In this document: positions 1,628 to 63,174 of the stretch, one piece after another
Position numbering within the stretch: position 1 is the stretch's first letter
How the letters are laid out: each line of letters starts with the position of its first letter
Assembly: GCF_006345805.1 (NCBI RefSeq)
Contig: NC_042998.1
Location: forward strand, 130,572,001 to 130,636,000
Reading direction: 5' to 3'
Origin: Octopus sinensis
Lineage: Eukaryota
Length of the DNA: 64,000 bases
Translations under genes and position numbers: made by a program
The notes under the pieces: generated by a model
The model's database searches: none
Told to the model about the DNA's origin: nothing
Seen by the model: only the letters and a program-made list of their open reading frames with translations

Positions 1628-1944
1628 TGGAATTATTATTCCTAATATCTACGAATGATAAAAATGGTACTGAAACCTATTTGCAAATGATACCAGGCTT
1701 ACCATCCCTACAGGAAGTGCAAAAAATCGTGTCAACTGAAACGACTGGTTTACTGAGAAGAGCATTATCACTGTGAAAACAACATCCATTCATGAATTTA
1801 TTTATTTATTTAGTTATTTTTTAAAATACATACTTTACCTGTGAATTTGCGTGTTATTCCTGTGAATGCATACGATGAGCTTCTCTGCCCTAGGTGTACG
1901 GAAAACACTCGGCGAGAAACGGAAGAAAATTTGAAGAAGGAAAG
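1628..1944 (+). mobile_element. R4/Dong-clade LINE 3' fragment (copy E)
   Basis: About 1655-1776 reads (MIK)/GTETYLQMIPGLPSLQEVQKIVSTETTGLLRRALSL*, matching the C-terminus of copy A (IPGELCLKEIQKIVLTSTAHILRKTLSM*). The 3' UTR carries the hairpin at 1881-1918 and is followed by TAA-like repeats from 1945. Confidence 0.85.
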
Positions 1945-3806
1945 TAATAATATTATTAATAATGATAATAATGATGATGATAATAAGAATAATAATAGTA
2001 ATAATAATAATAACAATAGTATTATATATATATTCGCACACACGCATACACACACACACAGACACACACATATATATATATATATGTATATATGGATATA
2101 TATATATATTTGTACATACATATACACTTGTGAGTGTCTCCGAGCAGATGAGATATGTAATAAACCATAGAAATACCGCGTAGAATTTGGAATAATTAAG
2201 AATGAGTTGAAGGGGATTTGGCGCTTATTCTACATTTCATATAGCGACTTATCGTTTGGGTAAAGGTAGGACAAATTCTTCGTATCACACTACTCAAGTC
2301 CTTTTGTATTAGTTCGTAGTTTGCTTATACAATATTATTGAGGGGAAATTGTAAGCTTATATGAAAGTAAAGAAACTGAAAACATCTAATCTAATCATAT
2401 TTAGTTTCATAAAATGAGACCTCGATCACATGTTTTTTCCCTTGCAATTCCTAAATAATCATAAACTTAGCAATCGTTTTAAACGATACGTTCTCGCCCA
2501 CATTATACAAAACTTTTTGTCAACTATGCAATGTCACACATTATGAGACACTGTATGCTCACACCACCAAACTTGCGCAATATGCATTTCCACCTTTATT
2601 ACAATCATGAATATAAACCCAGCAAAAGTAACTTTCAAATTTAAAAATTGAAGTAACTTATTGAAGGCTTCAGCACACCTTCATCCTACATTACACGTAT
2701 GGCAGTGTGAACCAGTTCCCCTCGAAATCCAAGTGAAGTTTATTACAGTTCCCAATGAATAAATTGTATTCACTTAGAAAACTTGAACGATGGATATAAT
2801 GATTAGAGACTCAAAGGGATACGGACGATATAAGTGCAAGGGTAACATCCTTGAAGCAGTCAATGCCACTGAAATGAAAAGATTCAGCAAATTCAACCTG
2901 TTTCATGGAATTTTAGAGAATATTTTCATTCAGTAAGATAATAAGAACATCAGTAATTCGACAAGCGGTAAGGAATTTTATTGGGTGAAACAGTTGGATT
3001 CTTCATTTCAGTTACATAAATTAAGAATTACAACATGAAACGTTCTTTCTATAAGTTCAGGTTATATACATTTCATAATTTTGTAACTTGCTACAGTACT
3101 AATATCTGAATTGCAGATATAAGAAAATATTTTATAATATATAAAGAAGTCCATATAAGCACTATAATTGGCGCCAACGTAAAGTTAGCCAACTTTCTTA
3201 GCCATCACACGGAATTTGTCCCGAGGTTAATATCTCGAAATTATAAAAACCAGACACATGCAAAAAGCAGACCAACCCCTCCTCCTCTATAATTAAATAC
3301 TTCGCAGATGACTTAAGAATCTATCTTCTGACGGGAGCCTTTTCAAAACGATTATCCTAAATTTTAGCGATAGAGTAACAAGATGTTAATCTAACGTGAA
3401 ACTAGTGAACAACCAACAGATCCCAAAACGAATACTACCGCCATAGCCAACACTACTCCACACCACTCTCTTAGCATAAGAAAACATTATGGATATAATT
3501 TAGCTGAATCCGCCGCTTAATCACCGGCATATACAGGAACTGTCTCACAGTAAGATCGTATTTCTGAACTACAGTGCAGTATCACAGGATAAAGTAAACA
3601 TGAACTGTTATTGTGTAAACCACTTTTTCCAGATTTCATAATTCAATTTGCAGCAAAAAATACAGCTAAGCGATATCTGCTGAAACCACTCAAGCCACCT
3701 ACACAGAGGATTGTTCCATTCTAATTCGCTAATATACAGATCAAACAAAGCGAATGCAGTTGGTAAAAATAAAAAAATATACGAGAGACGCACCAAACAC
3801 AATATT

Positions 3807-8131: not shown

Positions 8132-8544
8132 TAATTCTTTATTGCCCACAAGAGGCTAACCATAGAGGGGACAAACAAGGACAGACAAAGGGATTAAGTC
8201 GATTATATCGGCCCTAGTGCGTAACTGGTACTTAATTCATCGACCCCGAAAGGATGAAATGCAAAGTTGATCTCGGCGGAATTTGAACTCTTGACGTAGC
8301 GGCAGACGAAATACCTATTTCTTTACTACTCACAAGGGACCTAACACAGAGGAGACAAACAAGGTCAGACAGACGGATTAAGTCGATTATATCGACCCCA
8401 GTCCGTAACTGGTACTTATTTAATCGACTCCGAAAGGATGAACGGCAAAGTCGACCTCGGCAGAAATTGAACTCAGAACGTAGCGGCAGACGAAATACCA
8501 CTAAGCGTTTCGACCGGCGTGCTAACGTTTCTACCAGCTCGCCG
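8132..8544 (-). mobile_element. tRNA-derived SINE (type B), head-to-tail dimer, with 16-bp TSD
   Basis: Two monomers with the GAGTTCAAATTCCGCCGAG B-box and central GCCTTTCATCCTTTCGGGGTCGATAAATTAAGTACCAG domain (resembles the Meta domain from memory, unverified). TSD AGAATGACCTCAATCT at 8116-8131 and 8545-8560. Confidence 0.92.
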
Positions 8545-13276: not shown

Positions 13277-13660
13277 GGCGGCGAGCTGGCAAAAAGGTTA
13301 GCACGCAGGGTGAAATGCTTAGAAGTATTTCGTCTGCTGCTACGTTCTGAGCTCAAATTCCCCTGAGGTTGACTTTGTCTTTCATCCTTTTGGGGTCGAT
13401 TAAATAAGTACCAGTTACGTACTGGGGTCGATGTAATCGACTTAATCAGTGTTTCTATCCTTGTTTGTCCCCTCTGTTTTTAGCCCCTTGTGGGTAGTAA
13501 AGAAATGGGTATATCGTCTGTCTTTATGTTTTGAGTTCAAATTCCGTCGAGGTCGACTTTACTTTTCATCTTTTCGGGGTCGTTGAATTAAGTACCAGTT
13601 ACATACTGGGGTCGATCTAACCGACTGGGCCCCTCCCCTTGTGCCTAGAGTAGAAAAGAA
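13277..13660 (+). mobile_element. Type-B SINE dimer with 16-bp TSD (1 mismatch)
   Basis: Head GGCGGCGAGCTGGC...GTTAGCAC; the second monomer starts after ...GTAAAGAAATGG. TSD TATTATTT(A/C)GCCAAAA at 13261-13276 and 13661-13676. Confidence 0.9.
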
Positions 13661-17370: not shown

Positions 17371-18334
17371 GATATACATACTCATATTGCACAGAGGAAA
17401 ATCAATCTCGTGTACAAATTGGCTAAAATATGCACAATCACTTAGTCATATTTAAAGAACTTATACTAGCAAAATGGATTCAATGAGAAACATATGCTGC
17501 ATGCACAACACATGCATGCGCACACAGATAAACACACACACACACAACTTTATATGTATATATATATATAATCTAATACCTATACATGTGCAAACTATAA
17601 TATTCAACTGCATTTTTAAGCTCGAGTCTTCTGTTTTGAAGCGAATATACATGAGCGTTTACATATGGAAAATAGTTTCTTTGGGTGTACTTGTGGTTGT
17701 ATAGTTTACGCATGTTTAATACATTTCCTATGCAACACATTTTGACAAAGATTTGGTGGGTGTTCTGTTCACAAAGATATAAGCAGCACATACCTGCATA
17801 TGCACATTGTAAAAAATGCTTCTACGCCATTTATTTGCGGTAGAAATATCTATTGCACACCAGCCGTGATGAATTGACAACAATCAAAACTAGATACTCG
17901 ATTTAATGACGAATTTTGTCAGTATGCCGGTCGATTCTTTGGCGATAAAATGCTGAACTCAGTACTGTACACCATGAACCTAGTATTTTATACAAGTAAG
18001 TAGGTAAAAACCGATAATTATGCTGTACTCAGGCGAGTAAGTGTTTTAGTTTTGGAAATGATATTGCAGATATGAGAGAGAAAAGGTTTCATAAAACCTG
18101 CTCATTTTACTTAAGAGAAATGTACCCAATAATTCACCAATCTAAGAACCGGCGAATGCTACTAAATACCTAATCAACAGAAGAGACAATGAAGCCCTTG
18201 GTATTTTAAGATGCATCTCTAAATGTATGTTATGTTATATTTCTTTAGGAATACGTCAAACATGTAATTAGCACCTGCCCAAAAATGACATGAAGGTACC
18301 ACCTCCGTATGCGACATGTATATATATATGCATC

Positions 18335-24749: not shown

Positions 24750-25445
24750 TTAAAGCTCTCAGCTTACTTTGCTGGGTATGATGGAAAGTATCAGCTGTCC
24801 ACAGTCAGCAGACAAAGGTGACACGTGTTTACAGATCGCGCTTCAAGGACCCTGCAGAGAACTCTTGCAGTTCCAAGCAATGAGGACTTTTATAGATGTT
24901 CTATTTTTACATTTGTACCAATCATTTTCAGCCACGTTTGTAGTTGAGCGCTGATACTTCCTAGCGCTCCAATTACCACAGGTATCACGTCGACCTACTT
25001 CATTGCACACAACTTGCGTATTCCCCACTTTTTCTCTTTCTTTCTCTTTGTTCCTGTTGTAATCGGAACATTCTGTGTCAACTTCATACAACTTCTTTTT
25101 CTTTTTTTGTTCATCACGGTACTGTCCGATTCCCGATGTTTGATGTGATGGTAACACTGCATCATTGCTTCCCACAGGATTTTTTTTTGTTTTCATTTTC
25201 GGTAACTCCTGGTATACGATCATACCACGTCTTTGCTCTTTGTAGTACGTGACTTCTACAGAGCTGCCTATAGATCATTCTTGCCATATCGACATGTCGT
25301 CTTTTATAATCCTGTTGTGCCAATTTCGGGCATTCGCTAAAAATGTGCTATGTCTCTCTCACCACATCTTGCGTTTGTCGCTCTCAGTTTGTTGTCAATT
25401 TTGCGCTTCACATATTTCGTCCTTAACTAAAATCACCAGAGACAC
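24750..25445 (-). mobile_element. R4/Dong-clade LINE 3' fragment (copy G), decayed
   Basis: Minus-strand peptides LRTKYVKRKID, HIFSECPKLAQQDYKRRH, KTWYDRIP, DVIPVVIGALGSISAQLQTWLKMIG, KSSLLGTARVLCRVLEA; 3' hairpin at 24788-24824. Confidence 0.88.
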
Positions 25446-39129: not shown

Positions 39130-42100
39130 TGGGACGGAGACAAAGAATATAAGATAAGAAGTCTGAAGTGAAGAAAGAATACATAGTCCGTGTTTTTATA
39201 TAGCAAGAGAAAAGGATGACCATCCCAAAATATGACGAATTGTATTTAGATTCTGTTTTAAAATCATTCAGAGAAACCGTATTTTATGAATTTACCTATA
39301 CCCTGACCTGCTTGTAAACGTGGTACTGGCTTATGTTAAAAAGAAAAATGATAATTTAAGACTACTGCAATACACATAATTTGATGGACGCTAAATTTGA
39401 ATAAAACTGGTGCATTTATTTCCTGTTGTTAGCAATAAATAAATGTTGTTCCATAACCGAGCAACATTTTTGATGCTACAAACACATATTCTTGCAATAT
39501 CATCACTTTTAATGTAATATCGTATACGGTGCAGTAAACTTGAAATTTGTCTGTTAAAGTTAGCTACGGAATCAGTTATATGACTGAAAGAAAAAGCGTT
39601 ACAAGGTACACCGTGTGTCATGAACGCTGTATTAAAGTCAGCAATGTTAGCACGAATACCATAATATCTAAGTAGCAATCTGATTCAGTAAGCAACAGAG
39701 CAGTATCAGCAATACTATGATATAATGGCTACTGCAGTAGCTAGAGCAGCTGAAATATCTGCAGCAGTAGCAGGTAGGTGCAGTAGAAGCATATGTTTTT
39801 ATATAACTGTATTCAACTGATGCAGCGCACAGATTTTGCCGACCAATGGAACTACTATTAACATCGGTTTGCAACTGTAGCTTTAGCAATCGTACGATGT
39901 AGTAGTGGTACATAACATCCAATCTGACTCAACTAGACATTGGCATGTGGCTGCAGCCTAATTGATACAACTACCAGGGTAGTAATGCATTCATCGTCAG
40001 CAATTATAATGACCTAAACTTAGTGTAGTTGTATCTGAACCGATAGCATCTGCTACGATGACAGTAACGCTAATGACACGGCTCAGACCTATTAACTGTT
40101 TTTAATATTAGTCTTAATTTATTTTTTTAGTTCAAATCCCATCGGAGTTGATTTCTCTTATCAGTTCTTAGATATCGTTAAATATACCTTTTACTTGCAG
40201 CGGTGTTAATAATAAGTAGCAACGTATTATTATTTTCTTAGAAAATATGAAAAATAATCTTCGTTCCAAGTAATCATTATATGCACAAAGATATTAAAAT
40301 ATTGTAATTCATATGTTGCAACACTACCATTGCTTAATTATGCAGTTGCTAGGGTTACATTTTATTATTTCGACATGAAAACAACATTATGGCAGCAGAG
40401 TTAATATTAAAGGGGTTACATCACATTAAAAATGCATCAGAATACTTGATAGATCAAGAAGACCAAGGAAACGGACACAATTTTAAAATTCATTTCTTTT
40501 ATTTGTGATTGTATGCGGAAAGGTATTCTAGGGATTTTTGTGCCAAGATATTAGAGATATATACTTTATATTTATCGTAAATACAGTGTTGTAAATAGTA
40601 AAAGTAAGCAATATTACTGGTTACAAGAAGAAGAGGACAATGAAAGTGAAGGTTTTCATTGATATTCGTATAGTGGAATATCTTGAAGCCTGTAACCATC
40701 GCGACATATTCAAAATATTTCACACACACAATTAGACACACATGCCCCTGTATGTACTTTTTCATACAACAACAGCATGCATTATAAGATCTAAAATAAA
40801 TTTAATGAAGTTAAGCCTTACAAACTGTAGACTTAATATATAAAATTTATCTGTCTGACTGTCTTATCATCTATGTATACGCACACAAACATTCTCATAC
40901 GTGCTTTCAAGCATGCATACATACATACATGCATGTACACACACAGAGATAGACAAATGAATAAATAGTTAAATAGATATATAGATGGTTAAATATTACA
41001 TAAGTGCAGAAAAATCAGGGGTGTAAGTAAAAATTATGAGTGACTTTTTTTCTTTTAACTTTTTCTCGGTGATACAAATTTGCGCTGTAGTTATAAAAAT
41101 GAACCACTGCAGTTAAATCACACGGCTTTTAACTTCCATTTTTGTCACCTCAGAAATAGAGCTATTTGAAGATTTTCCTAATATATTATCGTATCATCAG
41201 TGATAGGTTACTCATTTCTTTTCATTGAGAGAATAGCAGTCTCTAGTTGCATTCACATAATGTCATACAGATCGAAAGGTTTTGTGTAATTTGCGTATAA
41301 ACGATTAATAAAATCACTACAGAGCAGTACTGTAAATAGGGATATCCGGTAAAATAACGAGTGCTTGTTTCGATTTAAATAAACGGAATTTTCGCGTTTT
41401 TGTACAAAACCACAATGTTTTCTTAGCACTGTCAAAAATATGTCTACCTGACTAGGTCAAACGATTATATTGATTACAGTCGCAAATTAAATAATCCAAT
41501 CTAATTGTGTTCTTGCTTGGTTTGCATAATACAAATGGGTATAACTGATATCCTCTCCGCTGGCAGAAATGGCAAAGTGACGCATGGTAAAGCGTTAACG
41601 AAAATAAGAAGCAATTCACGTCCTCACGCAGGAGAGAGCTAGCGAGAGAGAGAGAGAGAGACAGAGAGAGACAGGGAGAAGCAGACAGACAGCATTTATA
41701 ATATAGTTGAATCGCGTTGACTACTTTTTACAACGATGTTTGCAATAAACGTGCATATTTGCGTAAATTTTCCTCACATGACTACTCATCATAAAGCGAT
41801 GCACTGCATGTATTTATTAAATAATATATATTATGTGTCTATGCACGTTTATGAAATCTATGCAGGCCGATTTAGTAAGTTCTTAATTTTTATAATATAT
41901 TACGAACTACATGGTTCATGAAGAAAAGAATTTCAGTTTCCTGATGAGTAGTTTAGGGAACAGTGAAACTACATCAGTCAATCTTTTTTATGGAGGCATA
42001 AGTGAAAGACCGTCCTTGAAATATAGTACTCAGTATTTATTTGAAGAATATATACTTTTAAATTTTGCGTTTGCAGCTTTACTCACCCTACTGCTGTGTG

Positions 42101-42544: not shown

Positions 42545-43380
42545 TTTCACTTCAAAGAGATCTCATTTTCTCTTGCTATTTCTGTGAGAGAGGACAACAA
42601 CGTGTCTGACACAGTCTTCTTGCACTACACATGACATCCAAGTGCCAGTCTTAAAATCCTCGCTATCCCCAATAAAGCTGATTTTTTATCATGTTATCTT
42701 TATGTCCTCCCCGATTTCTCCAACAAACTTCTCGAACCTGATTCTTACTGTTCCTGATTTCCATAGAAACTACTTGCATGACAGCTACTTTCTTCGTTGC
42801 CCTGAATCTTTTCCAATTCATTATCATCCACTCGTACATTCTCAGGTATGGCAATATCTATGCTTTTGGCTTCCTCCATGATTTAACAACAACAACAGCA
42901 ATGCCTGTGTACAAGCAAAAATCACTGAATCACACTGGATTGTAAACTTCCATAAGATGTCATAATCTCGATGATACCTTCTAGTGTATACTCGTGCCAT
43001 TTACATGTCCTTGCAAGACCGTGTTATACATTTAATCTCCAATGAACATACATAACTATGTTATCATGCTTCCTTTTGTAACCCTTTTGCGCTAATTTGC
43101 TCAACTCACTCATGGTATGTGGGACTGATTCATTTTCCATGCTACAAGTCTTACAAAGAGGCAATTCAATACTCTATTTATCTTAGCTTGTTCTTGAGCA
43201 CTGCATTTCAAAGCCTCGGTGCATCCATTCAGACCACATTCCTTCCGCCACCTCCAAGTTTTATCTTGTCTTTCTCTTCATTCCTCTGAGGCATTGCCAA
43301 TTGTTGGCGTTCACTTTTCTGTTGTCAATCTTTGTTCTCCATCTTGCTTCTTGTTGTTAAGGCAGTGGGATTGCAGAAAC
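42545..43380 (-). mobile_element. R4/Dong-clade LINE 3' fragment (copy F), heavily decayed
   Basis: TEALKCSAQEQA, LCKTCSMENESVPHTMSELSKLAQKGYKRKHDN, VHWRL, KWHEY, ILWKFTIQCD, IDIAIPENVRVDDNELEKI, KSALLGIARILRLAL. Confidence 0.85.
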
Positions 43381-43499
43381 ATTTATGCGTCAAAAAAAAT
43401 CTAAGTCGTTAGGATAAAGTATCAGTCAAGGTTCAGGGACCCTGTATTAGATTTATCTCACTTGGAAACTGCTATCCATTTGAAAATATAGAAGCAATC

Positions 43500-43632
43500 G
43501 TTATCATTATTATCATCATCATCGTCATCGTCGTCGTCATCATCATCATCAACGTCATTATCATGATCATGCTCATGATCATGATCATCATCATCATCAT
43601 TATCATCATCGTTATTATCGTTATTATTATAA
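43500..43632. repeat. (TCA)/(TCG)/(TTA) degenerate triplet array
   Basis: Direct reading; reads ATA/ATG repeats on the element sense strand. Confidence 0.9.
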
Positions 43633-43889
43633 TTGCCTTTCCACAGCTTCTAACGCTAGAGATGTACTAGAGTGTCAGCTGTTCACTACCAGTGAACTAA
43701 GGTAACACCACTTATTTTTCGAGCACCTTCCCGAGTATTTGAGCGGTTCCAAGCAGGGCTGTTTTCTGCAAATGATCCACCCTTATTGCAGCCCCTATTT
43801 CTTACACATGCTTCTCGAACTTGCAGCCACTATTTGTTCCATGTATTTCTCGAGATTGCAGCACCTATTTGTTCCACGTACTTTTCAAG

Positions 43890-43890
<1 letters not shown>
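43633..43890 (-). mobile_element. R4/Dong-clade LINE extreme 3' fragment (copy C) with three 35-bp repeats at its 5' junction
   Basis: LEKYVEQIGAA...IRVDHLQKTALLGTAQILGKVLEK*; 3' UTR related to copy G; repeat units at 43786-43820, 43821-43855 and 43856-43890. Confidence 0.88.

Positions 43891-43934
<44 letters not shown>
43891..43934 (-). repeat. (TAA)n spacer
   Basis: Perfect TTA run on the plus strand. Confidence 0.97.
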
Positions 43935-44842
43935 GAGTGAGCGAGCAGTGAATGCCATCAAAGTAACACTGGGGTAAAATATACGAAGCCCAGTATAACT
44001 ATCATGACTATCCATGTGATGAGGGTACACTAGGTACATGCATCACAACAATATGTGCGCGACATGATGATCTCATATCAAGATAAACAGCACATGACCT
44101 TGCAAGTGAGGCCCATTTAGAATTTTCTTCTTGTCGTGTAACCCATCCCGCTCAAAAGGTCTCTGAATAAGGGCTGTTTAAGAATGTTGAAAGAAAAATC
44201 CATGTTTCCAGAGGTGAATCCCTCTTAACACATGGCTATGATTCTCCCCCACTACTTCTGTTCGTGATCAGAGGTGCACATATCGTCAGCCACTAAGGGA
44301 CATGCTCAACTGGTTAAGGTCAAACATCTGACAAGCAAATCTGTGGTATTGAGCAGAATATTTGCTGTAGCCCATCTTTTATACCAAGAATGATTGACGA
44401 ACGACTTCCCAAACAGATCTTCTACTCCCAACTCAAAGACGGCAAGCGTACAAAAGGAGGACAGAAGAAACGCTACAAGGACTCCCTGAAATCGAACCTC
44501 AAAAAGTGTGACATTGACTTCACCAACTGAGAGGAAACGGCAAAAAACAGACCACTCTGGATAACAACCATCCATGAGGGAACGGCGAATTTCGAGTCGA
44601 AAAGGTCTGCAGAGCTGGAGGAGAAAAGACGACGACGGAAGGAGCGCCAACAATAACCACGTGCGACTCTCCCTTCCGGCACTAGATGTCCGCACTGTGA
44701 CCGATCTTTTCGAGCAAGAATTGGTCTTATCAGTCACCTGCGGACTCACCAATCAATTTGCGCGAAGACCATCATCCTCGACCTTGAGGAATTGCCATAG
44801 ATACCAAGACAAAACAATGTACATGATAACACTTGCAATCAG
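43935..44842 (-). mobile_element. Second copy of the ~510 bp TAA-flanked non-coding element, interrupted by an RTE
   Basis: Reverse complement matches 36360-36845; the sequence resumes at 44810-44842 after the RTE; (TTA)n on both sides. Confidence 0.85.
44390..44800 (+). mobile_element. RTE-clade LINE 3' fragment with 9-bp TSD
   Basis: [43 protein letters not shown]...W...CPHCDRSFRARIGLISHLRTH (RTE C-terminus with zinc finger); two in-frame stops; ATACCAAGA at 44381-44389 and 44801-44809. Confidence 0.93.
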
Positions 44843-44863
44843 TTATTATTATTATTATTATCA

Positions 44864-44931
<68 letters not shown>

Positions 44932-44940
44932 ATTATTATT
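44843..44940 (-). repeat. (TAA)n spacer
   Basis: TTA run on the plus strand. Confidence 0.97.
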
Positions 44941-47071
44941 GTCATTTACTTTTAATCTGCATGTTTGATGCAATCACTTGCCGGGGCACACCCAGCGCCC
45001 TAGGGCAAGTGAAGGTTAAGAGTTGTTGAAATATAGCTGAAAGTTTGGGGAGGGGAAGTAGAGAAATATCTCCATGTAATACAAACACAAACATTTACAT
45101 TGATAGGGTTTTTCTAAGGATGTGGGCAGTACTTGTTAGCACAATCTTTTGGATTTCCTTGAGACATAGTTCTCCAGGGATATTGTCTAGGTGTTTCTGA
45201 CATCCCTTTTTTATCATACCTAGGCCACCTACAATAACAGGAACAGTTTTTGTTTTAAGATTCCACATATTTTGTATTTCGATTTCCAGGTCCTTATATT
45301 TACTAAGTTTGTCAAATTCCTTTACAGATACATTTTTATCAGTGGGGACGCTTACCTCTATTAGTCTGCAGGTATTTTCTTCCCTGTCTTTAACAATTAT
45401 GTCTGGTCGATTAGCCTTGATCGTTCTGTCAGTGTTGACTGGAAAATCCCAGAGGATGGTGACATCTTTACCTTCAACAACTGGCTGAGGATGGTGTTCA
45501 TACCAGTTAGCAGGAGTGTCGAATTTGTAGTATTTACATATCTTCCAATGTATATACTGTCCTACCCTATCGTGGCGATTTTTGTATTCGTTTGGTGTCA
45601 GCACAGGACATCCCGAAACGAGATGGTCTATCGTTTCGTCAAATGTGTCGCAGAATCTGCATTTAGGGTCAGTACCGTTTCGGAGAACATTAGCCTGGTA
45701 ATTTCTGGTAAACAAGCTTTGGTCTTGTGCTGCCATTATGAAGCCTTCAGTCTCTGCTTTCAATCCAGAGTTCTTCAGCCACTGATGGGTTGTTGCTTGG
45801 TCTACATCAGCATTTTGGCTTCGGAGAATATATTGTCCATGCAGGGGCTTCTGGCTCCACCGCCTCTCAATTTGATTCTGCCCGTTCTTTTTTGCAGTCT
45901 GCTTGATTCGCTTTGCTTGCTTGGTAGCAGTTGTTTCCGGCTCTTCATCTGATTCAAGGTTAATGTCTAGTTCTCTTTCGAACTTATAGGCTTCCTTGAC
46001 AATAGAATGCAGCTTTTTGCTGCTTTCGTGTTCGCACACAAGTCGCAGCATCCAGTCCTTTGTACTAGATAGGTACCTGTTCATTCCTACAGTAGAGGTC
46101 TTATAGCACAGCTCTAATTGCATCATTCCTCTCCCCCCGCTGCTTCTAGGTAGGTACAGGCGGTCTACATCTGCCTTAGGGTGGTGCATGCTCTTGGATG
46201 TCAGTAATTTTCTTGTCTTCCTGTCCAAGCGTTGGAGTTCCGTAAGGTTCCAGTTAATGATGTTAAAACTGTACTGGACTACTGGAAGCGCCAGGGTGTT
46301 AATCGCCTCAATGCAATTTTTGGAGTTGAGTTCAGTCTTCAGTACAAGCCTTATTCTCCTATAATATTCCTTTCTTATTTTTTCTTTCATAGTAGCATGA
46401 TATATTCCATCTTCGCTGATTCCTAGGTGGGTCAAGTTCCTTCATGGTAGTGTCAATATCTAATTTAACAGAAGCTGTTTGCCTGAGCTTGCCTCTTACA
46501 AAAGTTGCTTTAGCACACTTATCAAGGCCAAAATCCATTCCGATATCATTGCTAAACTCTTTAACAATTGTTAGCAGCCCTTCTAGTTCTTGGTCATTCC
46601 TGGCAAACAGCTTTAGGTTGTCCATATAGAAAAGGTGGTTTATTAACTTACTAAAAACTTTGTACCCATATCTGGTACTATCCAATTCGTTTGAGAGTGG
46701 GATCAATGCCATGCAAAAAAGTAATGGAGAGAGGGAGTCACCTTGAAAGATGCCTCGTTTGATGTTGATGCTGTTGGACTGGCTCATCCCATTACTATGG
46801 CTTAGAAAGGGACGTGTGTTCCACACGGTCATGCTATTCTCTAAGAATATTGAGACGACAGGAGAGATCTTGTATATCTCAAGGGCCTTGAGTAGCCATT
46901 TATGTGGGACACTGTCATACGCTTTCCTGTAGTCTATCCATGCCATACTCAGGTTTTTGTTTTTGCTCCGGCAATTCTGTTTATGAGCAATTGATCTTTG
47001 CACCCATAAGAGTTTCTTTTACAACCCTTTTGAGCTTGTGGAAGGATAGAGTTTTGTTCAAGGAAAGCGTA

Positions 47072-47072
<1 letters not shown>
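44941..47072 (-). mobile_element. R4/Dong-clade LINE, 5'-truncated within RT (copy A)
   Basis: ORF 46359-47003: MAWIDYRKAYDSVPH, GIFQGDSLSPLLF, YMDN (YxDD altered). ORF 45095-46435: CRFCDTFDETIDHLVSGC zinc knuckle, RHD, ANRPDIIV..LIEVSVP..K..KY (PD-(D/E)xK endonuclease). Frameshifts present. Confidence 0.96.

Positions 47073-47105
<33 letters not shown>
47073..47105 (-). repeat. (TAA)n spacer between copies A and B
   Basis: Perfect ATT run on the plus strand. Confidence 0.97.
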
Positions 47106-47108
<3 letters not shown>

Positions 47109-50100
47109 TAGTTTTATTTTTATAGCGTGCTTTCACTTCACTACCGAGCGCAGCTCTGTGTGCCTTGGGTATGTGCTGTGATTTGTTGTGATGCTCTGAT
47201 GGTTATTTTATGGAAAGTGTTCTGCGTAGGATGTGTGCAGTGCCCAGTAGTGCAATTTTCTGTATGTTATATGTGTTTGTAAGTCCTGGTGTTTTTGTTA
47301 TGTATTTGTCTGAATATTTTTTTATCATGCCTAATGCACCTACTATGATAGGAATTGTTTCTGTTTTCAGGTTCCACATTCTAGTTACCTCTATTTCCAG
47401 GTCTTTGTATTTTGAGAGTTTCTCCATTTCTTTTAGAGACACGTTGTCATCTGCCGGTACTGATACATCAATTAGAAAGCATTTGTTTTCTTCATGGTCT
47501 CTGACAACTATATCTGGTCTGTTGGCCTTAAGTTCTCTATCTGTGTGTATCGGCATATCCCAGAGTATGGTTGCTTTCTCGTTTTCTGTGACCTTTTCTG
47601 GTGTGTGCCTATACCATCTTTTTTCTGTTGTTATTCCATAATGTTGGCATAGCTTCCAATGTATGTAAGTTCCAACTCTGTCATGTCTGTGAATATATTC
47701 CTTCTTAGCCAGGACTGGGCAGCTAGAGATAATATGATTTATTGTTTCTTGTCCATCTCCACATATTCTGCAGTTACTTGTAATATTTCTTTTCATTACA
47801 TGTTTTTGGTAATTTCTGGTGGGGAGGCTTTGGTCTTGTGCTGCAATTAAAAATCTCTCTGTTTCTGCTTTGAGTCCTGAGCTTCTCAACCATTGCTGGG
47901 ATTTTTCTTTGTCTATTTCTTTTGCGTTTAGTTTAGTCCAGTATTTACCATGAAGGGGCTTTTCTTGCCATCGTTTTATCATGGTTCGTTGCTGTTCTAT
48001 TTTTAGTTTGGATTTCATTTTTTTTATAGCTTTTGTTGTTTCTTCATCTTCTTCTTCTTCTTCTTCTTCTTCTTCATGTTTATTAGGTGGTATGATTTCT
48101 TGTTTGTATTTGTCAGCTTCCTTAAATACTGAGAACAGTTTTTTGTTTTGCTCGTGTTTTGCCGCTATCTGGATCAGTTTTCCTTCCTTCTGAAGTAGAT
48201 ATTTTTGCAGTCCTATGGTGGTTATTTTATAGTGGTTTTCCAGCTGTATAAGGCCTCTACCACCTTCTATACGTTGTATATATAGTCTTTCTATGTCAGA
48301 TTTTGGGTGATGCATCCTAGATCCTGTCAGTATTTTTCATGTTTTCCTGTCTATTTTGGACAGTTCATTTCGTGTCCAGTTAAGGATATTGTAGCTGTAA
48401 CTTATAACTGGGACAGCTAAAGTGTTGATACCTATTATCTTGTTTTTAGCATTGAGCTCTGTGTTTAGTATTGATCTAACTCGTCTATAATATTCTTTTT
48501 TTATTTTCTCTTTCATTTGTGTGTGTTGTGTCTTATCTAGTTCATAGATTCCTAAGTATTTGTAAGTTTGGCTTTGGTCTAATTCTTTTATTTCATTTGC
48601 TTCATCTAGTGTGATGTTGTTACTCTTAACTAGTTTTCCTCTTTTCATGGTTACTTTGGCGCATTTTTCTAATCCAAATTTCATATCTATTTCTTTGGTA
48701 AATCCATGAACTGTCTTTAATAGTGTTTCCAGCTGTTTGTCATTTGCAGCGTATAGTTTTAGGTCATCCATATATAAAATGTGGCTGATCGTTTTGCCGT
48801 AACATTTATATCCGCATCCAGTTCTATTTAGCATATCAGATAGAGGTGACAGTGCCAAGCAGAAAAGGAGTGGAGAGAGCGTATCTCCCTGGATATTCCT
48901 CTTCTAATGGGGATGTCTTTGGTTTCCATGAGTCCCTCTTTTGTTTGGAGGTGTAGGACTATTTGCCATTTATTCATAGAGTGCTCTATGAATTTTATGA
49001 TTGTTGGTGCTACTACTTTGTTAATGGCTAGTGTTTCGAGGATCCATGTGTGGGGGATGCTATCAACGCCTTTTTGTAGTCACTCCAGGCCATACTGAGG
49101 CCTTTCTTCTTCTTTCTGGCTGTCTTCAGTTATGGCTTTATATCAATTATGTTGATCTTTACAGCCATATGAGCCTTTGCGGCATCCTTTCTGCTCTTCT
49201 GGGAACAGTTTGTATTCGTCCAGGTGCTTGTTCAGCCTTTGTGATATCACTGCAGTAAATGCCTTGAACATAGTAGGGAGGCAGGTTATTGGTCTGTAGT
49301 TTTCTGGTTTTTCTGTTTCATTTGATTTGGGAATTAAGATGGTTTTCCCCTTCGTGAGCCATTCAGGCATTGTCTATGGCTCTGCTAGTACGTTGTTAAT
49401 GTTTTCAGCCAGCTTTTTGTGCATTCCTGTTAGATATTTCAACCAGAAGTTGGGGATCTTGTCATGCCCAGGTGCCTTCCAGTTGCTTAGTCTTTGCAGT
49501 GCCTGGGTGACCTCTTCAGTTGTTATGGGGGTCCAAGTTTGTTCAGATGCCGAGTTTGTTATTTTGATACTCCTTTTTTTTGGTGGTTCGTTCGCCGACC
49601 ATATTTCTCCCCAGAATTCTTCCAATTCTTCTGCCGTTGGTGCTGCAGTGACTTCTATTTTATTTTTGCCCAGTTCTTGGTAGAACTTTTTGGGGTCGGA
49701 GTTGAACTTTTTGTTCTGTTCAAAGAAGCGTTGGCGTTTCTCGTACCGGCGGATCCTTTGAGCTTTGGCAAGGATATCTTACTTCAGCTTTTCTTTTATC
49801 TCCGGCAAATCTTTTTCTGTGGTGTTATATTTGCGGAGCATTTTTGTTCTCTTTTTGTTGCTCAGTAGCGTTGCTTGTTTGCTGATTTCATTAAGAATCG
49901 ACAGGTCTTTTCTATTTTTTTTTATTTTGTTTTGGATGTTTTTATCCCACAGGGTTTGTTTGGTGGGTGGTGGTACTCCTGTTTGGGCGGTTTGGGTGAG
50001 TATCCAGCTTCTTTTGTGGCTGCAGTGGCTGCTGCGTATATCAAGTCATTTAGTTCAGTGATATCACTTTTTTTTGTTTCAGTGGCTAGTTCAGTGACGG

Positions 50101-51052
50101 CTAGGTTATGGTTGTTTATAATTGGTGTCGTTATTGCGTGCGTTATTTTTATTCTTGGGAGGTATGGTCGGTGGTCCATTTGAGCTCTGTGGTTTTTAGT
50201 TCTTTGATTATTTTATTTTTTATATTATCATAATCATTAGGCTCCCCTTCGTTGTTTACATCGTGTTTGTTGGGAATGTTGCGTTTGTCTTCGTGTTTTA
50301 CAGTTTCAGTGTTTATATTATTGGGCATTGTTGTGTGGCTTCTATCTACATTTTCCTGGTGTATGTTTTCTTTTAGGTGTTCTATTTCTATTTCTGATAT
50401 TTTTTTTGTGTTGAGAATGTATCTTCGTACGTTAGCTAATTTATTAGGGTTCATTGCTGTATATCCAAGTCTAAATCTCTATTATTTTCCTTCCATATTT
50501 TATATGTATGTGGTTGTTGTATTTTCATTTTTTGGGTAGAGTACTGCTGTGAAGTATGCGTGTAAGATAGAAATGTATCCTCACGTGTCCATTTACGTCT
50601 TTTGGGTTTTATTTGCGGGACATGAGGTACAACGTCCGGCCCATTATTTTGACGGTCGTCATTTTCGTAGGGTACCGGTCCGTTTATTTCTGTTGTCACA
50701 TTATTTCGCACGTGTAGTTTTTTCGTACATTTTTTGTTGTAGGTTTAATGTACGTACCGCTCGATTGTTATTCTTGGGTTGAATAGTATCGGTGGCATTT
50801 AATTTCTTCGTAGTTCCTTTGTACATGGTGTTTGGGGTCGGAGATGATCGTGATGTTTCACGCATGTTTACATGGTGGAGATGATATCGAGTCAAAATAC
50901 ATCATTTCGTTTCGAAAATAGTAATAAATTTCAATTTGTATTACTTACTCGGATACAGTCCAATTCTTTGTTAGTAAAACTTTGGCTCCATAGGATGTCC
51001 TTGTTTTCGATGTTTGTGGATAGGTTTCGGAGCTCTGAATTTTCCTTCTTAA
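47106..51052 (-). mobile_element. R4/Dong-clade LINE, near full length (~3.9 kb), inactivated (copy B)
   Basis: Fragmented single ORF: N-terminal RRKWTRED...KLANVRRYI, NWKAPGHDKIPNFWLK, NYRPITCLPT, EQKGCRKGSYGCKD, LYMDDLKLY, CRICGDGQETINHIISSC, ANRPDIVV..LIDVSVP..EKLSKY, ALLGTAHILRRTLSIK*. In-frame stops (e.g. 48337-48339, 49374-49376) and 1-bp indels. Confidence 0.97.
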
Positions 51053-62164: not shown

Positions 62165-62251
<87 letters not shown>

Positions 62252-62263
62252 TGATGATGATGA
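62165..62263 (+). repeat. (TAA)n-(TGA)n microsatellite
   Basis: Direct reading. Confidence 0.97.
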
Positions 62264-63174
62264 TATACATGCAATAAATTAAACTATTGGAAAAGAAATA
62301 TTCCTAGCATCGGGATACAACGAGTATCCTGAGATGCCTAAAACCCCACCAAGTGTTCTAGCTGTCCCTAATAACACTGGAGCTGTATTAAACTACGTGT
62401 TATAGCTATTTCCTCTATGCATATGTTGAAATGTTTCGAGCAAGTTTCTAATGCAGCTTATAATTACTGGGATACATTTCACTCGCACTTTCCTTAGTCT
62501 TTGTAATTTAAGTGTTACGTCCTGGTATTTTTGCTATTTTTTCTATACCTCCCATATTAATTTTTTTCATCATTTGGGACTGTAAAGTTAATTATGTGGC
62601 ACTTTCTATTGTCTTTATCTACTGCATCTACATCAGGCTTTCTAGCATCTATTACTCTGTCGGTCAGAATGTTAAAGTCCCACAATATCTTGTATTTCTT
62701 GCTTTCTAGTACTTGGCGAGGCTCATGTTCATACCATTTATCAGTATGTTCGAATCCTAGCTTTCTACATAACTCCCAGTGGATTACTGTCCCTAGGTTG
62801 TCATGTCTTCTCTTGTATTTCTGTGCAAGCATGATACATTCACTTACTATATCAGTAGGGATTTCCTCTTTTGATTTGAATAGCCTACATTAGGAATCTA
62901 TTTGGAATTTGTCGACCCTGGCGTTTATCCAATTAGTCCTTAATGCATGATTTTGTGCTGCTACTAACACACTTTTGTCTTCCTTTTTACCCTTCCTTTC
63001 TACAAACATAACCATGTCTCACTACTACTATTTACTGCAACTATCTTTGTGAACACCCAGCAAGGCCTTCTCCTGCCAGTTAGGTAACTTCTGTTCTTTT
63101 TTCGGGTTCTTATCTTCGTTTCGGTTCTTGACCTCCCTATGTCTTGCTGTGACTGTAGCCGCTTTTAATAATAT
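62264..63174 (-). mobile_element. R4/Dong-clade LINE 3' fragment (copy D), decayed
   Basis: WQEKALLG, LVAAQNHALRTNW, IVSECIMLAQKYKRRHDNLGTVIHWELCRKLGFEHTDKWYEHEP, ILWDFNILTDRVIDARKPDV, VLLGTARTLGGVL; hairpin at 62305-62340. Confidence 0.92.

What the first reader, a model, noticed from the sequence alone, without database searches (positions are those of the whole stretch)
42582..47175. Covarying stem / 3x1 internal loop / stem RNA element near the 3' end of R4/Dong copies from divergent families
Seen in sequence: each R4/Dong copy folds into the same shape on its sense strand, about 25-40 nt before its 3' end, although the stems share little primary sequence. A (44974-45012): TCACTTGCC-CTA-GGGCGC-tgggt-GTGCCC-C-GGCAAGTGA. 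E (1881-1918): TTCTCtGCC-CTA-GGTGT-acggaaa-ACACT-C-GGCGAGAA. B (47139-47175): CACaTACC-CAA-GGCAC-acagagct-GCGCT-C-GGTAGTG. D (62305-62340): TAGgCATC-TCA-GGATAC-tcgtt-GTATCC-C-GATGCTA. C (43672-43708): GTGTTACC-TTA-GTTCACT-ggt-AGTGAAC-A-GCTGACAC. G (24788-24824): GTGTCACC-TTT-GTCTGC-tgact-GTGGAC-A-GCTGATAC. F (42582-42614) has a weaker version: CTGTG-TCA-GACA-cgttgt-TGTC-ctctct-CACAG. Shared features are a 3-nt (mostly YYA or CWA) by 1-nt asymmetric loop and an inner stem that starts with G. Established: RLE-type retrotransposons such as R2 recognise a structured 3' UTR during target-primed reverse transcription. Inference: this is the cis-acting RT-recognition element of this R4/Dong lineage. 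I do not know of it being described, but cannot check.
Basis: partly seen in the sequence, partly recalled or inferred. Interest (0 to 1): 0.8.

Follow-up and report, generated by a model that had tools for sequence, protein, structure and literature searches.

The report
Conserved 3' hairpin of Dong retrotransposons
A 39-base RNA hairpin with a fixed asymmetric internal loop sits about 30 bases before the (TAA)n tail of Dong-type jumping genes in animals from corals to fish, and it is most likely the handle by which the element's own reverse transcriptase picks its RNA for copying.

Summary
All seven strings are at the stated coordinates. A covariance model built only from sequences outside the window ranks copies A, C, E and D as the four best hits in the whole window. 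B is weak but lies in the right place, G is doubtful, and F is not supported.

The same 39-nt element follows the stop codon of homologous elements (reverse transcriptase plus restriction-like endonuclease) in about 45 metagenome and genome loci. These include Penaeus, Oculina, Asterias and Nothobranchius. A (TAA)n tail follows after a median of 32.5 nt.

The stems covary: the inner helix is 92-94% paired, with all six pairs changed on both sides. C / GG.

Shape alone is common by chance. The conserved core, the position and the covariation carry the case.

The best reading, inferred and not tested, is a cis-acting recognition element for target-primed reverse transcription. It resembles the UnaL2/ZfL2 3' stem-loop and the R2 3'UTR core.

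I found no Rfam family and no paper describing it. I rate it a new member of a known kind, of moderate interest.

The parts
44974..45012 (-). Copy A hairpin: TCACTTGCC-CTA-GGGCGC-tgggt-GTGCCC-C-GGCAAGTGA. This is the best instance in the window.
   Evidence: Exact string. MFE -26 kcal/mol, z -4.8. Model R2, built without window sequences: 36.9 bits, E=7.5e-9. 0/100 shuffled regions fold as well locally.
44843..44973 (-). Copy A 33-nt spacer (44941-44973) and (AAT/TAA)n tail (44843-44940).
   Evidence: TRF array 44843-44940. Sequence read. Spacer length.
45095..47003 (-). Copy A ORF remnant, 5'-truncated: RT, thumb/linker, CCHC zinc knuckle and RLE. It carries one frameshift.
   Evidence: ORFs 45095-46435 and 46359-47003. 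Pfam RVT_1 and zf-RVT. Weak match to R2 proteins 9nl3 and 9dou. 703 homologs.
47137..47175 (-). Copy B hairpin, a degenerate instance: CACaTACC-CAA-GGCAC-acagagct-GCGCT-C-GGTAGTG.
   Evidence: Exact string. CM only 9.3-10.6 bits, E 2-4. It lies ~30 nt after the stop and 33 nt before the tail. 1/100 shuffled regions fold as well.
47073..47136 (-). Copy B spacer and (AAT)11 tail (47073-47105). Copy A's truncated 5' end abuts this tail.
47203..49625 (-). Copy B ORF remnants (RT to RLE), broken into several frames.
   Evidence: ORF list. tblastn. Pfam.
43671..43709 (-). Copy C hairpin, a variant with a C.C mismatch in the outer stem. It sits 3 nt after the stop of a ~20-aa ORF remnant.
   Evidence: Not in any seed. 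17.4 bits, E=0.02 with R1. 18.4 bits, E=0.005 with R2. Context.
43503..43670 (-). Copy C 40-nt spacer and mixed (ATA/GAT)n tail.
62303..62341 (-). Copy D hairpin: TTAGGCATC-TCA-GGATAC-tcgtt-GTATCC-C-GATGCTAGG.
   Evidence: z -4.3. R2 16.0 bits, E=0.029. 2/100 shuffled regions fold as well.
62165..62302 (-). Copy D 38-nt spacer, then (ATC)5(ATT)28 on the sense strand. This is the complement of the usual tail type.
1881..1919 (+). Copy E hairpin: TTCTCTGCC-CTA-GGTGT-acggaaa-ACACT-C-GGCGAGAAA.
   Evidence: R2 18.0 bits, E=0.007. 3/100 shuffled regions fold as well. The ORF C-terminus lies at 1660-1773.
1920..2018 (+). Copy E spacer and degenerate (TAA)n tail (1945-2018).
24788..24824 (-). Copy G hairpin, a doubtful member. 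It is about 79% identical to C's hairpin (identity estimated by eye from the strings, not computed), the invariant loop A is replaced by T, and no tail is visible.
   Evidence: Not reported by either CM at E<=10. z -2.9. 7/100 shuffled regions fold as well. The degenerate C-terminus runs into the hairpin.
42582..42614 (-). Copy F 'weaker version'. It is not supported as an instance of the element.
   Evidence: z -0.5. 74/100 shuffled regions fold as well. No CM hit. No core motif and no tail.

Best explanation
**What it is.** The element is a conserved 39-nt structured RNA motif in the sense-strand 3'UTR of a large lineage of (TAA)n-targeting, Dong-type non-LTR retrotransposons with a restriction-like endonuclease.

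**Anatomy, 5' to 3'**
- A variable outer stem of 3-9 bp. It always closes with C-G, C-G.
- A 3-nt 5' internal loop, C-Y-A, with the A nearly invariant.
- A 6-bp inner stem that starts G-G.
- A 5-nt apical loop, uGGuu.
- A single unpaired C (or A) on the 3' side.
- A spacer of about 27-40 nt.
- The (UAA)n tail.

**Proposed mechanism (inferred, not shown).** The element's own ORF protein binds the hairpin, probably reading the unpaired CYA/C internal loop and the GG of the apical loop. Binding marks this RNA as the template. It also places the RT about 30 nt from the (UAA)n tail. The tail anneals to the nicked (TTA)n strand of a (TAA)n microsatellite and primes target-primed reverse transcription.

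**What is shown.** The motif exists, it covaries, its position is fixed relative to the tail, its orientation follows the ORF, and it occurs across animal phyla.
For: **Independent detection in the window.** A model built without window sequences puts its four best hits of the whole window on copies A, C, E and D.

**Occurrence elsewhere.**
- 57 hits at E<=0.1 over 276 kb.
- All but two of the 54 hits in fetched loci are on the ORF-sense strand, mostly within about 80 nt after the stop. The two exceptions are inverted copies with their own tails.
- It is present after the stop in named genomes, at E 5e-10 to 3.5e-6: Penaeus indicus, Oculina patagonica, Nothobranchius furzeri and Asterias amurensis.

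**Covariation on a gapless alignment anchored by a sequence-only HMM (A6).**
- 78.4% of cells are paired, against 59.7+-1.3% in shuffles and 23-43% when partners are slid.
- The covariation score is 0.535, against 0.207 in shuffles (0/500 reach it) and 0.075-0.147 slid.
- The inner helix is 91.9% paired and all 6 pairs change on both sides.
- CM-fitted alignments agree.
- There are 37 inner-stem haplotypes, 24 of them fully paired.

**Selection on the motif, not on the UTR.** Information content is 0.77 bits per position in the hairpin, against 0.22 upstream and 0.32 downstream. Core positions reach 2.0 bits.

**Fixed architecture.** 40 of 50 distinct hairpins have a (TAA)n-type tail within 100 nt, and the median spacer is 32.5 nt. 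The distance from stop to hairpin varies from 0 to about 250 nt.

**Strand.** The inner helix has 31 G.U cells against 8 A.C cells, which favours the sense RNA.

**Precedents.**
- R2Bm needs only a ~40-nt core of its 3'UTR, with essential unpaired adenines bound by NTE-1 and the thumb (PMC10499050).
- UnaL2 needs a stem / internal-loop 'hinge' / stem with a GGAUA loop whose second G is recognised, next to a 3' (UGUAA)n repeat (PMC1636434).
- ZfL2 proteins bind only their cognate stem-loop (PMC4176376).
Against: - No binding, TPRT or retrotransposition data exist for this element. The function is argued by analogy.
- The outer stem is reduced to 3-4 bp in some sublineages.
- Sense and antisense folds are equally stable overall, and outer-helix G.U equals A.C at 29 each. 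The strand argument therefore rests on the inner helix and on context.
- Some copies whose proteins fall inside hairpin-bearing clades lack the motif: L002/L040, L009 and L011.
- Related (TAA)n-tailed lineages use other 3'UTR motifs. That fits lineage-specific recognition, but it also shows the hairpin is not indispensable for this lifestyle.
- A host RNA-binding factor would leave the same conservation pattern.
Confidence: 0.6

Rival explanations
1. The hairpin binds a host factor, or otherwise acts on RNA metabolism, rather than on RT recognition. Possible roles are 3'-end formation, stability, export or translation of an RNA that ends in (UAA)n instead of a normal poly(A) tail, in the way the histone mRNA 3' stem-loop works.
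For: - It is a conserved sense-strand 3'UTR structure at a fixed distance from the 3' end.
- It is conserved across phyla, as a site for a conserved host protein would be.
- Several spacers contain AATAAA (read).
- The spacer carries a second enriched motif, AAGCA.
Against: - Sister lineages with the same tail and lifestyle carry unrelated 3'UTR motifs. A shared host pathway would be expected to keep one motif.
- Every experimentally studied LINE 3' stem-loop of this layout is recognised by the element's own protein.
- There is no match to any Rfam family, including the histone 3' stem-loop.
Confidence: 0.15
2. The inverted repeat acts at the DNA or cDNA level. For example, a hairpin in the first-strand cDNA could prime or position second-strand synthesis, or a cruciform could be recognised by the endonuclease.
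For: - Sense and antisense strands fold equally well on average (-13.5 against -13.3 kcal/mol).
- Outer-helix G.U equals A.C, 29 against 29.
Against: - The inner helix shows 31 G.U against 8 A.C cells. Several changes between copies C and G are transitions to G.U that would be mismatches on the other strand (read).
- The conserved unpaired nucleotides and the apical GG look like an RNA-protein recognition surface.
- The target is the (TAA)n repeat, not the hairpin.
Confidence: 0.07
3. Nothing functional is present. The similarity reflects recent common ancestry or horizontal spread of one element family, plus chance hairpins in the more divergent copies.
For: - The generic shape is common by chance, ~72 per shuffled window.
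- F, and on their own B and G, are not significant.
- Many sequences in the alignment are close relatives, so cell counts overstate independent events.
- Proteins are unusually similar across phyla, 58-69%.
Against: - Flanking UTR is essentially unalignable (0.2-0.3 bits) while core positions are invariant.
- There are 24 different fully paired inner-stem haplotypes.
- Slid-partner controls, which keep relatedness, drop to 23-43% paired against 78-82%.
- The independent model recovers A, C, E and D.
Confidence: 0.03

Closest known systems
3' conserved stem-loop of L2-clade 'stringent' LINEs: eel UnaL2, zebrafish ZfL2-1 and ZfL2-2 (PMC1636434, PMC4176376)
   Same: - A ~36-40-nt hairpin in the 3' tail, split into lower and upper stems by a small asymmetric internal loop or bulge.
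- An apical 5-nt loop with conserved G residues: GGAUA there, uGGuu or GGA(u) here.
- A short tandem repeat at the RNA 3' end, where reverse transcription starts: (UGUAA)n there, (UAA)n here.
- Different lineages carry different cognate motifs.
   Different: - The host elements belong to another LINE group: APE endonuclease and two ORFs there, a single ORF with a C-terminal RLE here.
- Here a 27-40-nt spacer separates the hairpin from the repeat.
- I found no partner SINE.
- No functional data exist here.
- I did not test for sequence homology.
R2 3'UTR core, the 'R2 tag' of Bombyx mori R2 (PMC10499050)
   Same: - The protein architecture is the same (RT, thumb, linker, CCHC, RLE), and so, presumably, is the TPRT mechanism.
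- A ~40-nt RNA core is sufficient there, and the conserved element here is 39 nt.
- Unpaired adenines between two stems are the critical contacts there, and the nearly invariant A12 of the internal loop here is the obvious counterpart.
   Different: - The R2 core is assembled from two stems that lie far apart in a 248-nt UTR, not from one contiguous hairpin.
- R2 targets 28S rDNA and has no microsatellite tail.
- There is no Rfam or sequence match between the two.
- The proteins are only distantly related (E ~1e-4).
5' HDV-like self-cleaving ribozyme of R4 and Dong (PMC3774820)
   Same: It is the one structured RNA element already described for this clade. It shows that Dong RNA is processed from a co-transcript that includes (TAA)n.
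   Different: It lies at the 5' end, is a ribozyme, and has an unrelated structure. None was detected in this window.

Membership tests
R4/Dong clade non-LTR retrotransposon (the host element) | A single ORF with a reverse transcriptase, followed by a CCHC motif and a C-terminal restriction-like (PD-(D/E)XK) endonuclease. | tested here: met
   - Pfam RVT_1 and zf-RVT.
- CRFC...H...C and RPDI...D/E...K motifs are visible in the ORFs.
- The thumb-to-CCHC region matches R2 proteins 9nl3 and 9dou.
- Clade definition from PMC7998251.
R4/Dong clade non-LTR retrotransposon (the host element) | Dong-type target specificity: insertion into (TAA)n microsatellites. | tested here: met
   - (TAA/AAT)n tails follow A, B and E, and a mixed (ATA/GAT)n tail follows C.
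- C and E are also preceded by (TAA)n-type repeats.
- A is inserted into B's tail.
- 40 of 50 distinct relatives have such a tail.
- The (TAA)n target is stated in PMC7998251.
R4/Dong clade non-LTR retrotransposon (the host element) | RT phylogeny places the element with R4, Dong and Rex6, and not with R2, NeSL, CRE or HERO. | not tested
Only the distance from R2 is shown (E ~1e-4).
R4/Dong clade non-LTR retrotransposon (the host element) | An HDV-like ribozyme at the 5' end, as reported for R4 and Dong (PMC3774820). | tested here: inconclusive
   Rfam gives no hit in the window or at B's 5' side. However, all copies here are 5'-truncated or degenerate.
LINE 3'-tail recognition stem-loop (stringent type, UnaL2/ZfL2-like) | A conserved stem-loop in the sense-strand 3'UTR close to the 3' end. 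| tested here: met
   CM hits lie after the stop in ORF-sense orientation. Covariation is shown.
LINE 3'-tail recognition stem-loop (stringent type, UnaL2/ZfL2-like) | A short tandem repeat at the 3' terminus, downstream of the stem-loop. | tested here: met
   A (TAA)n-type tail begins a median of 32.5 nt after the hairpin.
LINE 3'-tail recognition stem-loop (stringent type, UnaL2/ZfL2-like) | It is bound by the cognate LINE protein and required for retrotransposition. | not testable with these tools
   This needs EMSA, TPRT or retrotransposition assays.
LINE 3'-tail recognition stem-loop (stringent type, UnaL2/ZfL2-like) | Cognate specificity: different lineages carry different tails. | tested here: inconclusive
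   Two other 3'UTR motif types (X and Y) precede (TAA)n in related lineages. However, the crude C-terminal tree does not separate motif types cleanly.
R2 3'UTR RNA element | Sequence or structure match to the described R2 3'UTR element. | tested here: not met
   There is no Rfam 15 match at gathering threshold anywhere in the window, and none at E<=10 around copy A.

The most novel reading that the evidence does not exclude
The 39-nt hairpin, the ~30-nt spacer and the (UAA)n tail together form a compact, portable tag. This tag would be sufficient for Dong-type RT to copy any attached RNA into (TAA)n microsatellites. Its hinge-plus-GG-loop design matches that of L2-clade LINEs because 3'-tail recognition of this form predates the split between RLE-type and APE-type LINEs.
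Probability: 0.12. Interest if true: 0.75.

Novelty: new member of a known kind. Interest (0 to 1): 0.55.

Why it matters
**Template choice.** How a LINE picks its own RNA is known in molecular detail for only a few elements: R2, and UnaL2/ZfL2. This result gives the R4/Dong lineage a short, sharply defined candidate element. It has an obvious mutational map: A12, the bulged C, the loop GG, and two stems with natural compensatory variants.

**Comparative material.** The motif is conserved from cnidarians to vertebrates, so many natural variants are already available.

**Annotation.** A covariance model of the motif finds the 3' ends of Dong copies, including copies truncated to ~200-300 nt that protein searches barely detect or miss. 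Copy C, for example, gave no tblastn hit.

**Engineering.** R2-based gene insertion relies on a minimal 3'UTR tag. An equally small tag for a microsatellite-targeting relative would be a useful comparison.

Tried and rejected
- **Shape-only descriptor** (perfect stems >=5 bp, 3x1 loop). It missed many real instances with one mismatch. It matches ~72 times per shuffled window and more than 1400 times in the real one, because of (TA)n and (TG)n repeats. I dropped it as evidence.
- **Fixed-geometry pair count.** It barely separates sense UTRs from reverse complements or shuffles. It was useful only for locating the core motif.
- **Copy F.** No support from folding, the covariance models or context.
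- **Copy G.** It resembles C but fails both models and has no tail. I kept it only as doubtful.
- **Marginal model hits** at 13618-13657, 17946-17990 and 39967-39986. None has an ORF or tail nearby, so I treat them as noise.
- **Rfam.** Nothing at gathering threshold, and only chance-level hits at E<=10.
- **Whole-hairpin strand test.** Sense and antisense fold energies do not differ (p=0.88). Only the inner-helix G.U excess is informative.
- **C-terminal protein tree against 3' motif type.** Too crude to show clean co-segregation.
- **Literature.** Seven full-text searches found no description of a Dong, R4 or Rex6 3' hairpin. The original Dong paper and the mosquito R4 paper are not held, so I cannot exclude prior mention there or in Repbase notes.

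Full report
**1. Is the observation in the sequence?**

All seven quoted strings occur exactly at the stated coordinates. E is on the + strand and the other six on the - strand.

A tblastn search with the two long ORFs of the region maps remnants of non-LTR ORFs that carry a reverse transcriptase (RT) and a restriction-like endonuclease (RLE). They lie immediately upstream, in the sense direction, of six of the hairpins. The seventh, C, follows a ~20-aa remnant of the conserved C-terminus...KTALLGTAQILGKVLEK* (read).

The ORFs carry RVT_1 and zf-RVT and the motifs CxxC...H...C and RPDI...D/E...K. They match solved R2 proteins weakly over the thumb-to-CCHC region.

Downstream of hairpins A, B, C, D and E a trinucleotide microsatellite begins after about 25-45 nt. 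G and F have none.

**2. Is it more than chance within the window?**

Folded alone, A, E, B and D give the drawn stem / 3x1 loop / stem as the minimum-energy structure. C and G deviate slightly, because the drawn outer stem has a C.C mismatch. F does not fold as drawn.

I compared the best 40-nt local fold in the ~128-nt region around each hairpin with the best in 100 dinucleotide shuffles of that region. Shuffles doing at least as well:

| Copy | Shuffles of 100 |
|---|---|
| A | 0 |
| B | 1 |
| D | 2 |
| E | 3 |
| G | 7 |
| C | 10 |
| F | 74 |

The bare shape is not rare. A '>=5 bp / 3x1 / >=5 bp' descriptor matches about 72 times per shuffled window. Shape alone would not carry the finding.

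**3. Relatives elsewhere.**

- Copy A's C-terminal ORF has 703 homologs at E<=1e-10. Named ones come from Penaeus, Oculina, Nothobranchius, Clytia, Exaiptasia and Asterias.
- The first locus fetched (L001) showed the same architecture with different stems: TTGCTGACC-TTA-GGTCAC-aggg-GTGATC-C-GGTCAGCAA, then 32 nt, then (AAT)n.
- A scan of metagenome contigs with an alignment of the RLE region returned 80 more loci.
- Inspecting their 3'UTRs revealed a recurrent core...RCC-CYA-GGnnCA-uGGuu-UGnnCY-C-GGY....

**4. Models and independent recovery.**

A 20-sequence gapless seed (A2) gave model R1. Over the window plus 81 loci it found 53 sites at E<=1. Of the 49 sites in fetched loci, 47 are on the ORF-sense strand, mostly just after the stop.

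To remove circularity for the window, I built model R2 from 26 sequences, none from the window. With filters off, its results in the 64-kb window on both strands were:

| Copy | Bits | E-value |
|---|---|---|
| A | 36.9 | 7.5e-9 |
| C | 18.4 | 0.005 |
| E | 18.0 | 0.007 |
| D | 16.0 | 0.029 |
| B | 9.3 | 3.8 |
| G, F | not reported | >10 |

- A, C, E and D are the four best hits in the window.
- The zones where a hit was expected make up under 1% of the search space. Four top hits all falling in them is not chance (my estimate).
- The next hits have E of about 1 and no ORF or tail nearby.

**5. Covariation.**

A sequence-only HMM finds the same sites in the same register. On the resulting gapless alignment of 45 distinct sequences, which is not fitted to any structure (A6):

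- 78.4% of cells are paired, against 59.7+-1.3% when partners are shuffled and 23-43% when partners are slid.
- The covariation score is 0.535, against 0.207 for shuffles (0/500 reach it) and 0.075-0.147 slid.
- The inner helix is 91.9% paired, and all six pairs change on both sides.
- The three pairs of the outer helix nearest the loop are 89-96% paired. Pair 7 alternates G-C, A-U and U-A.
- The distal outer pairs are paired in only 42-67% of sequences in a fixed register. Some sublineages keep just 3-4 outer pairs.

CM-fitted alignments agree. There are 37 inner-stem haplotypes, 24 of them fully paired.

**6. Conserved nucleotides.**

Frequencies among 43 gapless distinct sequences:

| Position | Base | Frequency |
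|---|---|---|
| 8, 9 | C | 100% |
| 12 | A | 95% |
| 13 | G | 91% |
| 20 (loop) | G | 86% |
| 21 (loop) | G | 95% |
| 31 | G | 93% |
| 32 | G | 95% |

Information content averages 0.77 bits per position in the hairpin. It is 0.22 bits in the 30 nt upstream and 0.32 bits in the 30 nt downstream. Selection therefore acts on the motif, not on the UTR as a whole.

**7. Architecture and distribution.**

- Forty of 50 distinct hairpins are followed within 100 nt by a (TAA)n-type tail. The median spacer is 32.5 nt, and most fall between 27 and 40 nt.
- The distance from the stop codon varies from 0 to about 250 nt. The element is therefore positioned relative to the 3' end, not to the ORF.
- It is present, each time followed by ~30-35 nt and (TAA)n, in these assemblies:

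| Species | Group | E-value |
|---|---|---|
| Penaeus indicus | crustacean | 2e-7 |
| Oculina patagonica | coral | 5e-10 |
| Asterias amurensis | starfish | 9e-9 |
| Nothobranchius furzeri | teleost | 3.5e-6 |

- Other related lineages, mostly in termite-gut metagenome contigs, have different conserved 3'UTR motifs before the same tail.
- A crude protein tree does not separate the motif types cleanly.

**8. What the host elements are.**

- RT plus a C-terminal RLE, with insertion into (TAA)n, is the published description of Dong within the R4/Dong clade (PMC7998251; PMC4640811).
- In the window, A's truncated 5' end abuts B's tail.
- C and E are short 5'-truncated copies flanked by (TAA)n-type repeats.
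- I did not place the RT in a phylogeny, and I found no 5' HDV-like ribozyme. Clade membership is therefore consistent but not fully tested.

**9. Mechanism.**

Shown:
- a conserved, covarying RNA hairpin in sense orientation;
- a fixed distance from a microsatellite tail that matches the target.

Inferred:
- The element's protein binds the hairpin, probably through the unpaired CYA/C and the loop GG.
- This selects the RNA and places the RT near the (UAA)n tail.
- The tail anneals to the nicked target strand and primes reverse transcription.

The inference rests on three precedents:
- R2Bm needs only a ~40-nt 3'UTR core with essential unpaired adenines (PMC10499050).
- UnaL2 needs a stem / hinge / stem with a GGAUA loop, next to a (UGUAA)n repeat (PMC1636434).
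- ZfL2 proteins bind only their cognate stem-loop (PMC4176376).

The inner helix shows 31 G.U against 8 A.C cells, which favours the sense RNA. The outer helix and the overall fold energies are neutral.

Rivals are a host-factor or RNA-metabolism element, a DNA- or cDNA-level hairpin, and mere shared ancestry. The last is largely excluded by sections 5 and 6.

**10. Novelty.**

- No Rfam 15 family matches.
- Seven full-text searches found no description of a 3' hairpin in Dong, R4 or Rex6.
- The only structured RNA described for the clade in what I could read is the 5' ribozyme (PMC3774820).
- The original Dong paper and the mosquito R4 paper are not held, so I cannot exclude earlier mention there or in Repbase.
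- The kind of element, a LINE 3'-tail recognition stem-loop, is well known. This looks like a new, unusually widespread member for an RLE lineage.

**11. Caveats.**

- Many aligned sequences are close relatives, so cell counts overstate independent events.
- Model E-values are rough.
- The hosts of most metagenome contigs are unknown.
- The window's own organism was not identified.
- No step of the proposed function was tested.

Noticed in passing
window 42582-50800, - strand: Four Dong-like copies lie in the same orientation. A's truncated 5' end abuts B's (AAT)n tail at 47073-47105, and F's ORF remnant follows C's tail. This looks like repeated oriented insertion into the tail microsatellite of an earlier copy.
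   Followed up: partly
window 62165-62302, - strand: Copy D's tail reads (ATC)5(ATT)28 on its sense strand. That is the complement of the (GAT)n(AAT)n tails seen elsewhere. It may reflect a lineage that inserts in the opposite orientation, or a tail-to-tail arrangement. L082 and L084 also switch from (AAT)n to (ATT)n after their tails.
   Followed up: no
L036:2169-2330, L043, L045-L048, L060, L067, L068, L072:2163-2260 (type X); L028, L034, L038:2112-2200, L081 (type Y): Related (TAA)n-tailed lineages lack the 39-nt hairpin. They carry other conserved 3'UTR motifs right after the stop: type X, GATCTGGACTTACCAGAAGAC...CACCTAATAACTAATAGGCG, and type Y, AGCCTGAGCGGTGGGGATCACCGCTGGTTCAAGAG.
   Followed up: partly
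Spacers after the hairpin, e.g. window 44941-44973 and L018:2219-2245: The 27-40-nt spacer is enriched for AAGCA: 15 of 30 distinct spacers against about 4 expected, with 0/300 shuffles reaching this. Several spacers also hold AATAAA. This may be a second, single-stranded part of the element. Relatedness among the sequences inflates the count.
   Followed up: partly
window 8135-8499 and 13500-13617: A 184-nt unit is repeated in tandem at 8135-8499. It shares the string CGACCCCAGT..GTAACTGGTACTTAATT..CGACCCCGAAA with a - strand segment near 13.5 kb. This is probably an unrelated SINE-like repeat.
   Followed up: no
whole window: The window is very rich in microsatellites, with 89 TRF rows in 64 kb and 35% G+C. 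The closest named homolog of copy A's protein is from the shrimp Penaeus indicus (69%).
   Followed up: no
L002, L040, L009, L011: These copies have C-terminal proteins that fall inside hairpin-bearing clades, yet they lack the hairpin after the stop. L002 and L040 have an A-rich stretch there instead. Secondary insertions, rearrangements or assembly artefacts are possible causes.
   Followed up: no
window 43785-43892, - strand: Three copies of a 35-nt tandem repeat sit inside the short copy C. They lie between the upstream (AAT)n and the remnant of the ORF C-terminus.
   Followed up: no
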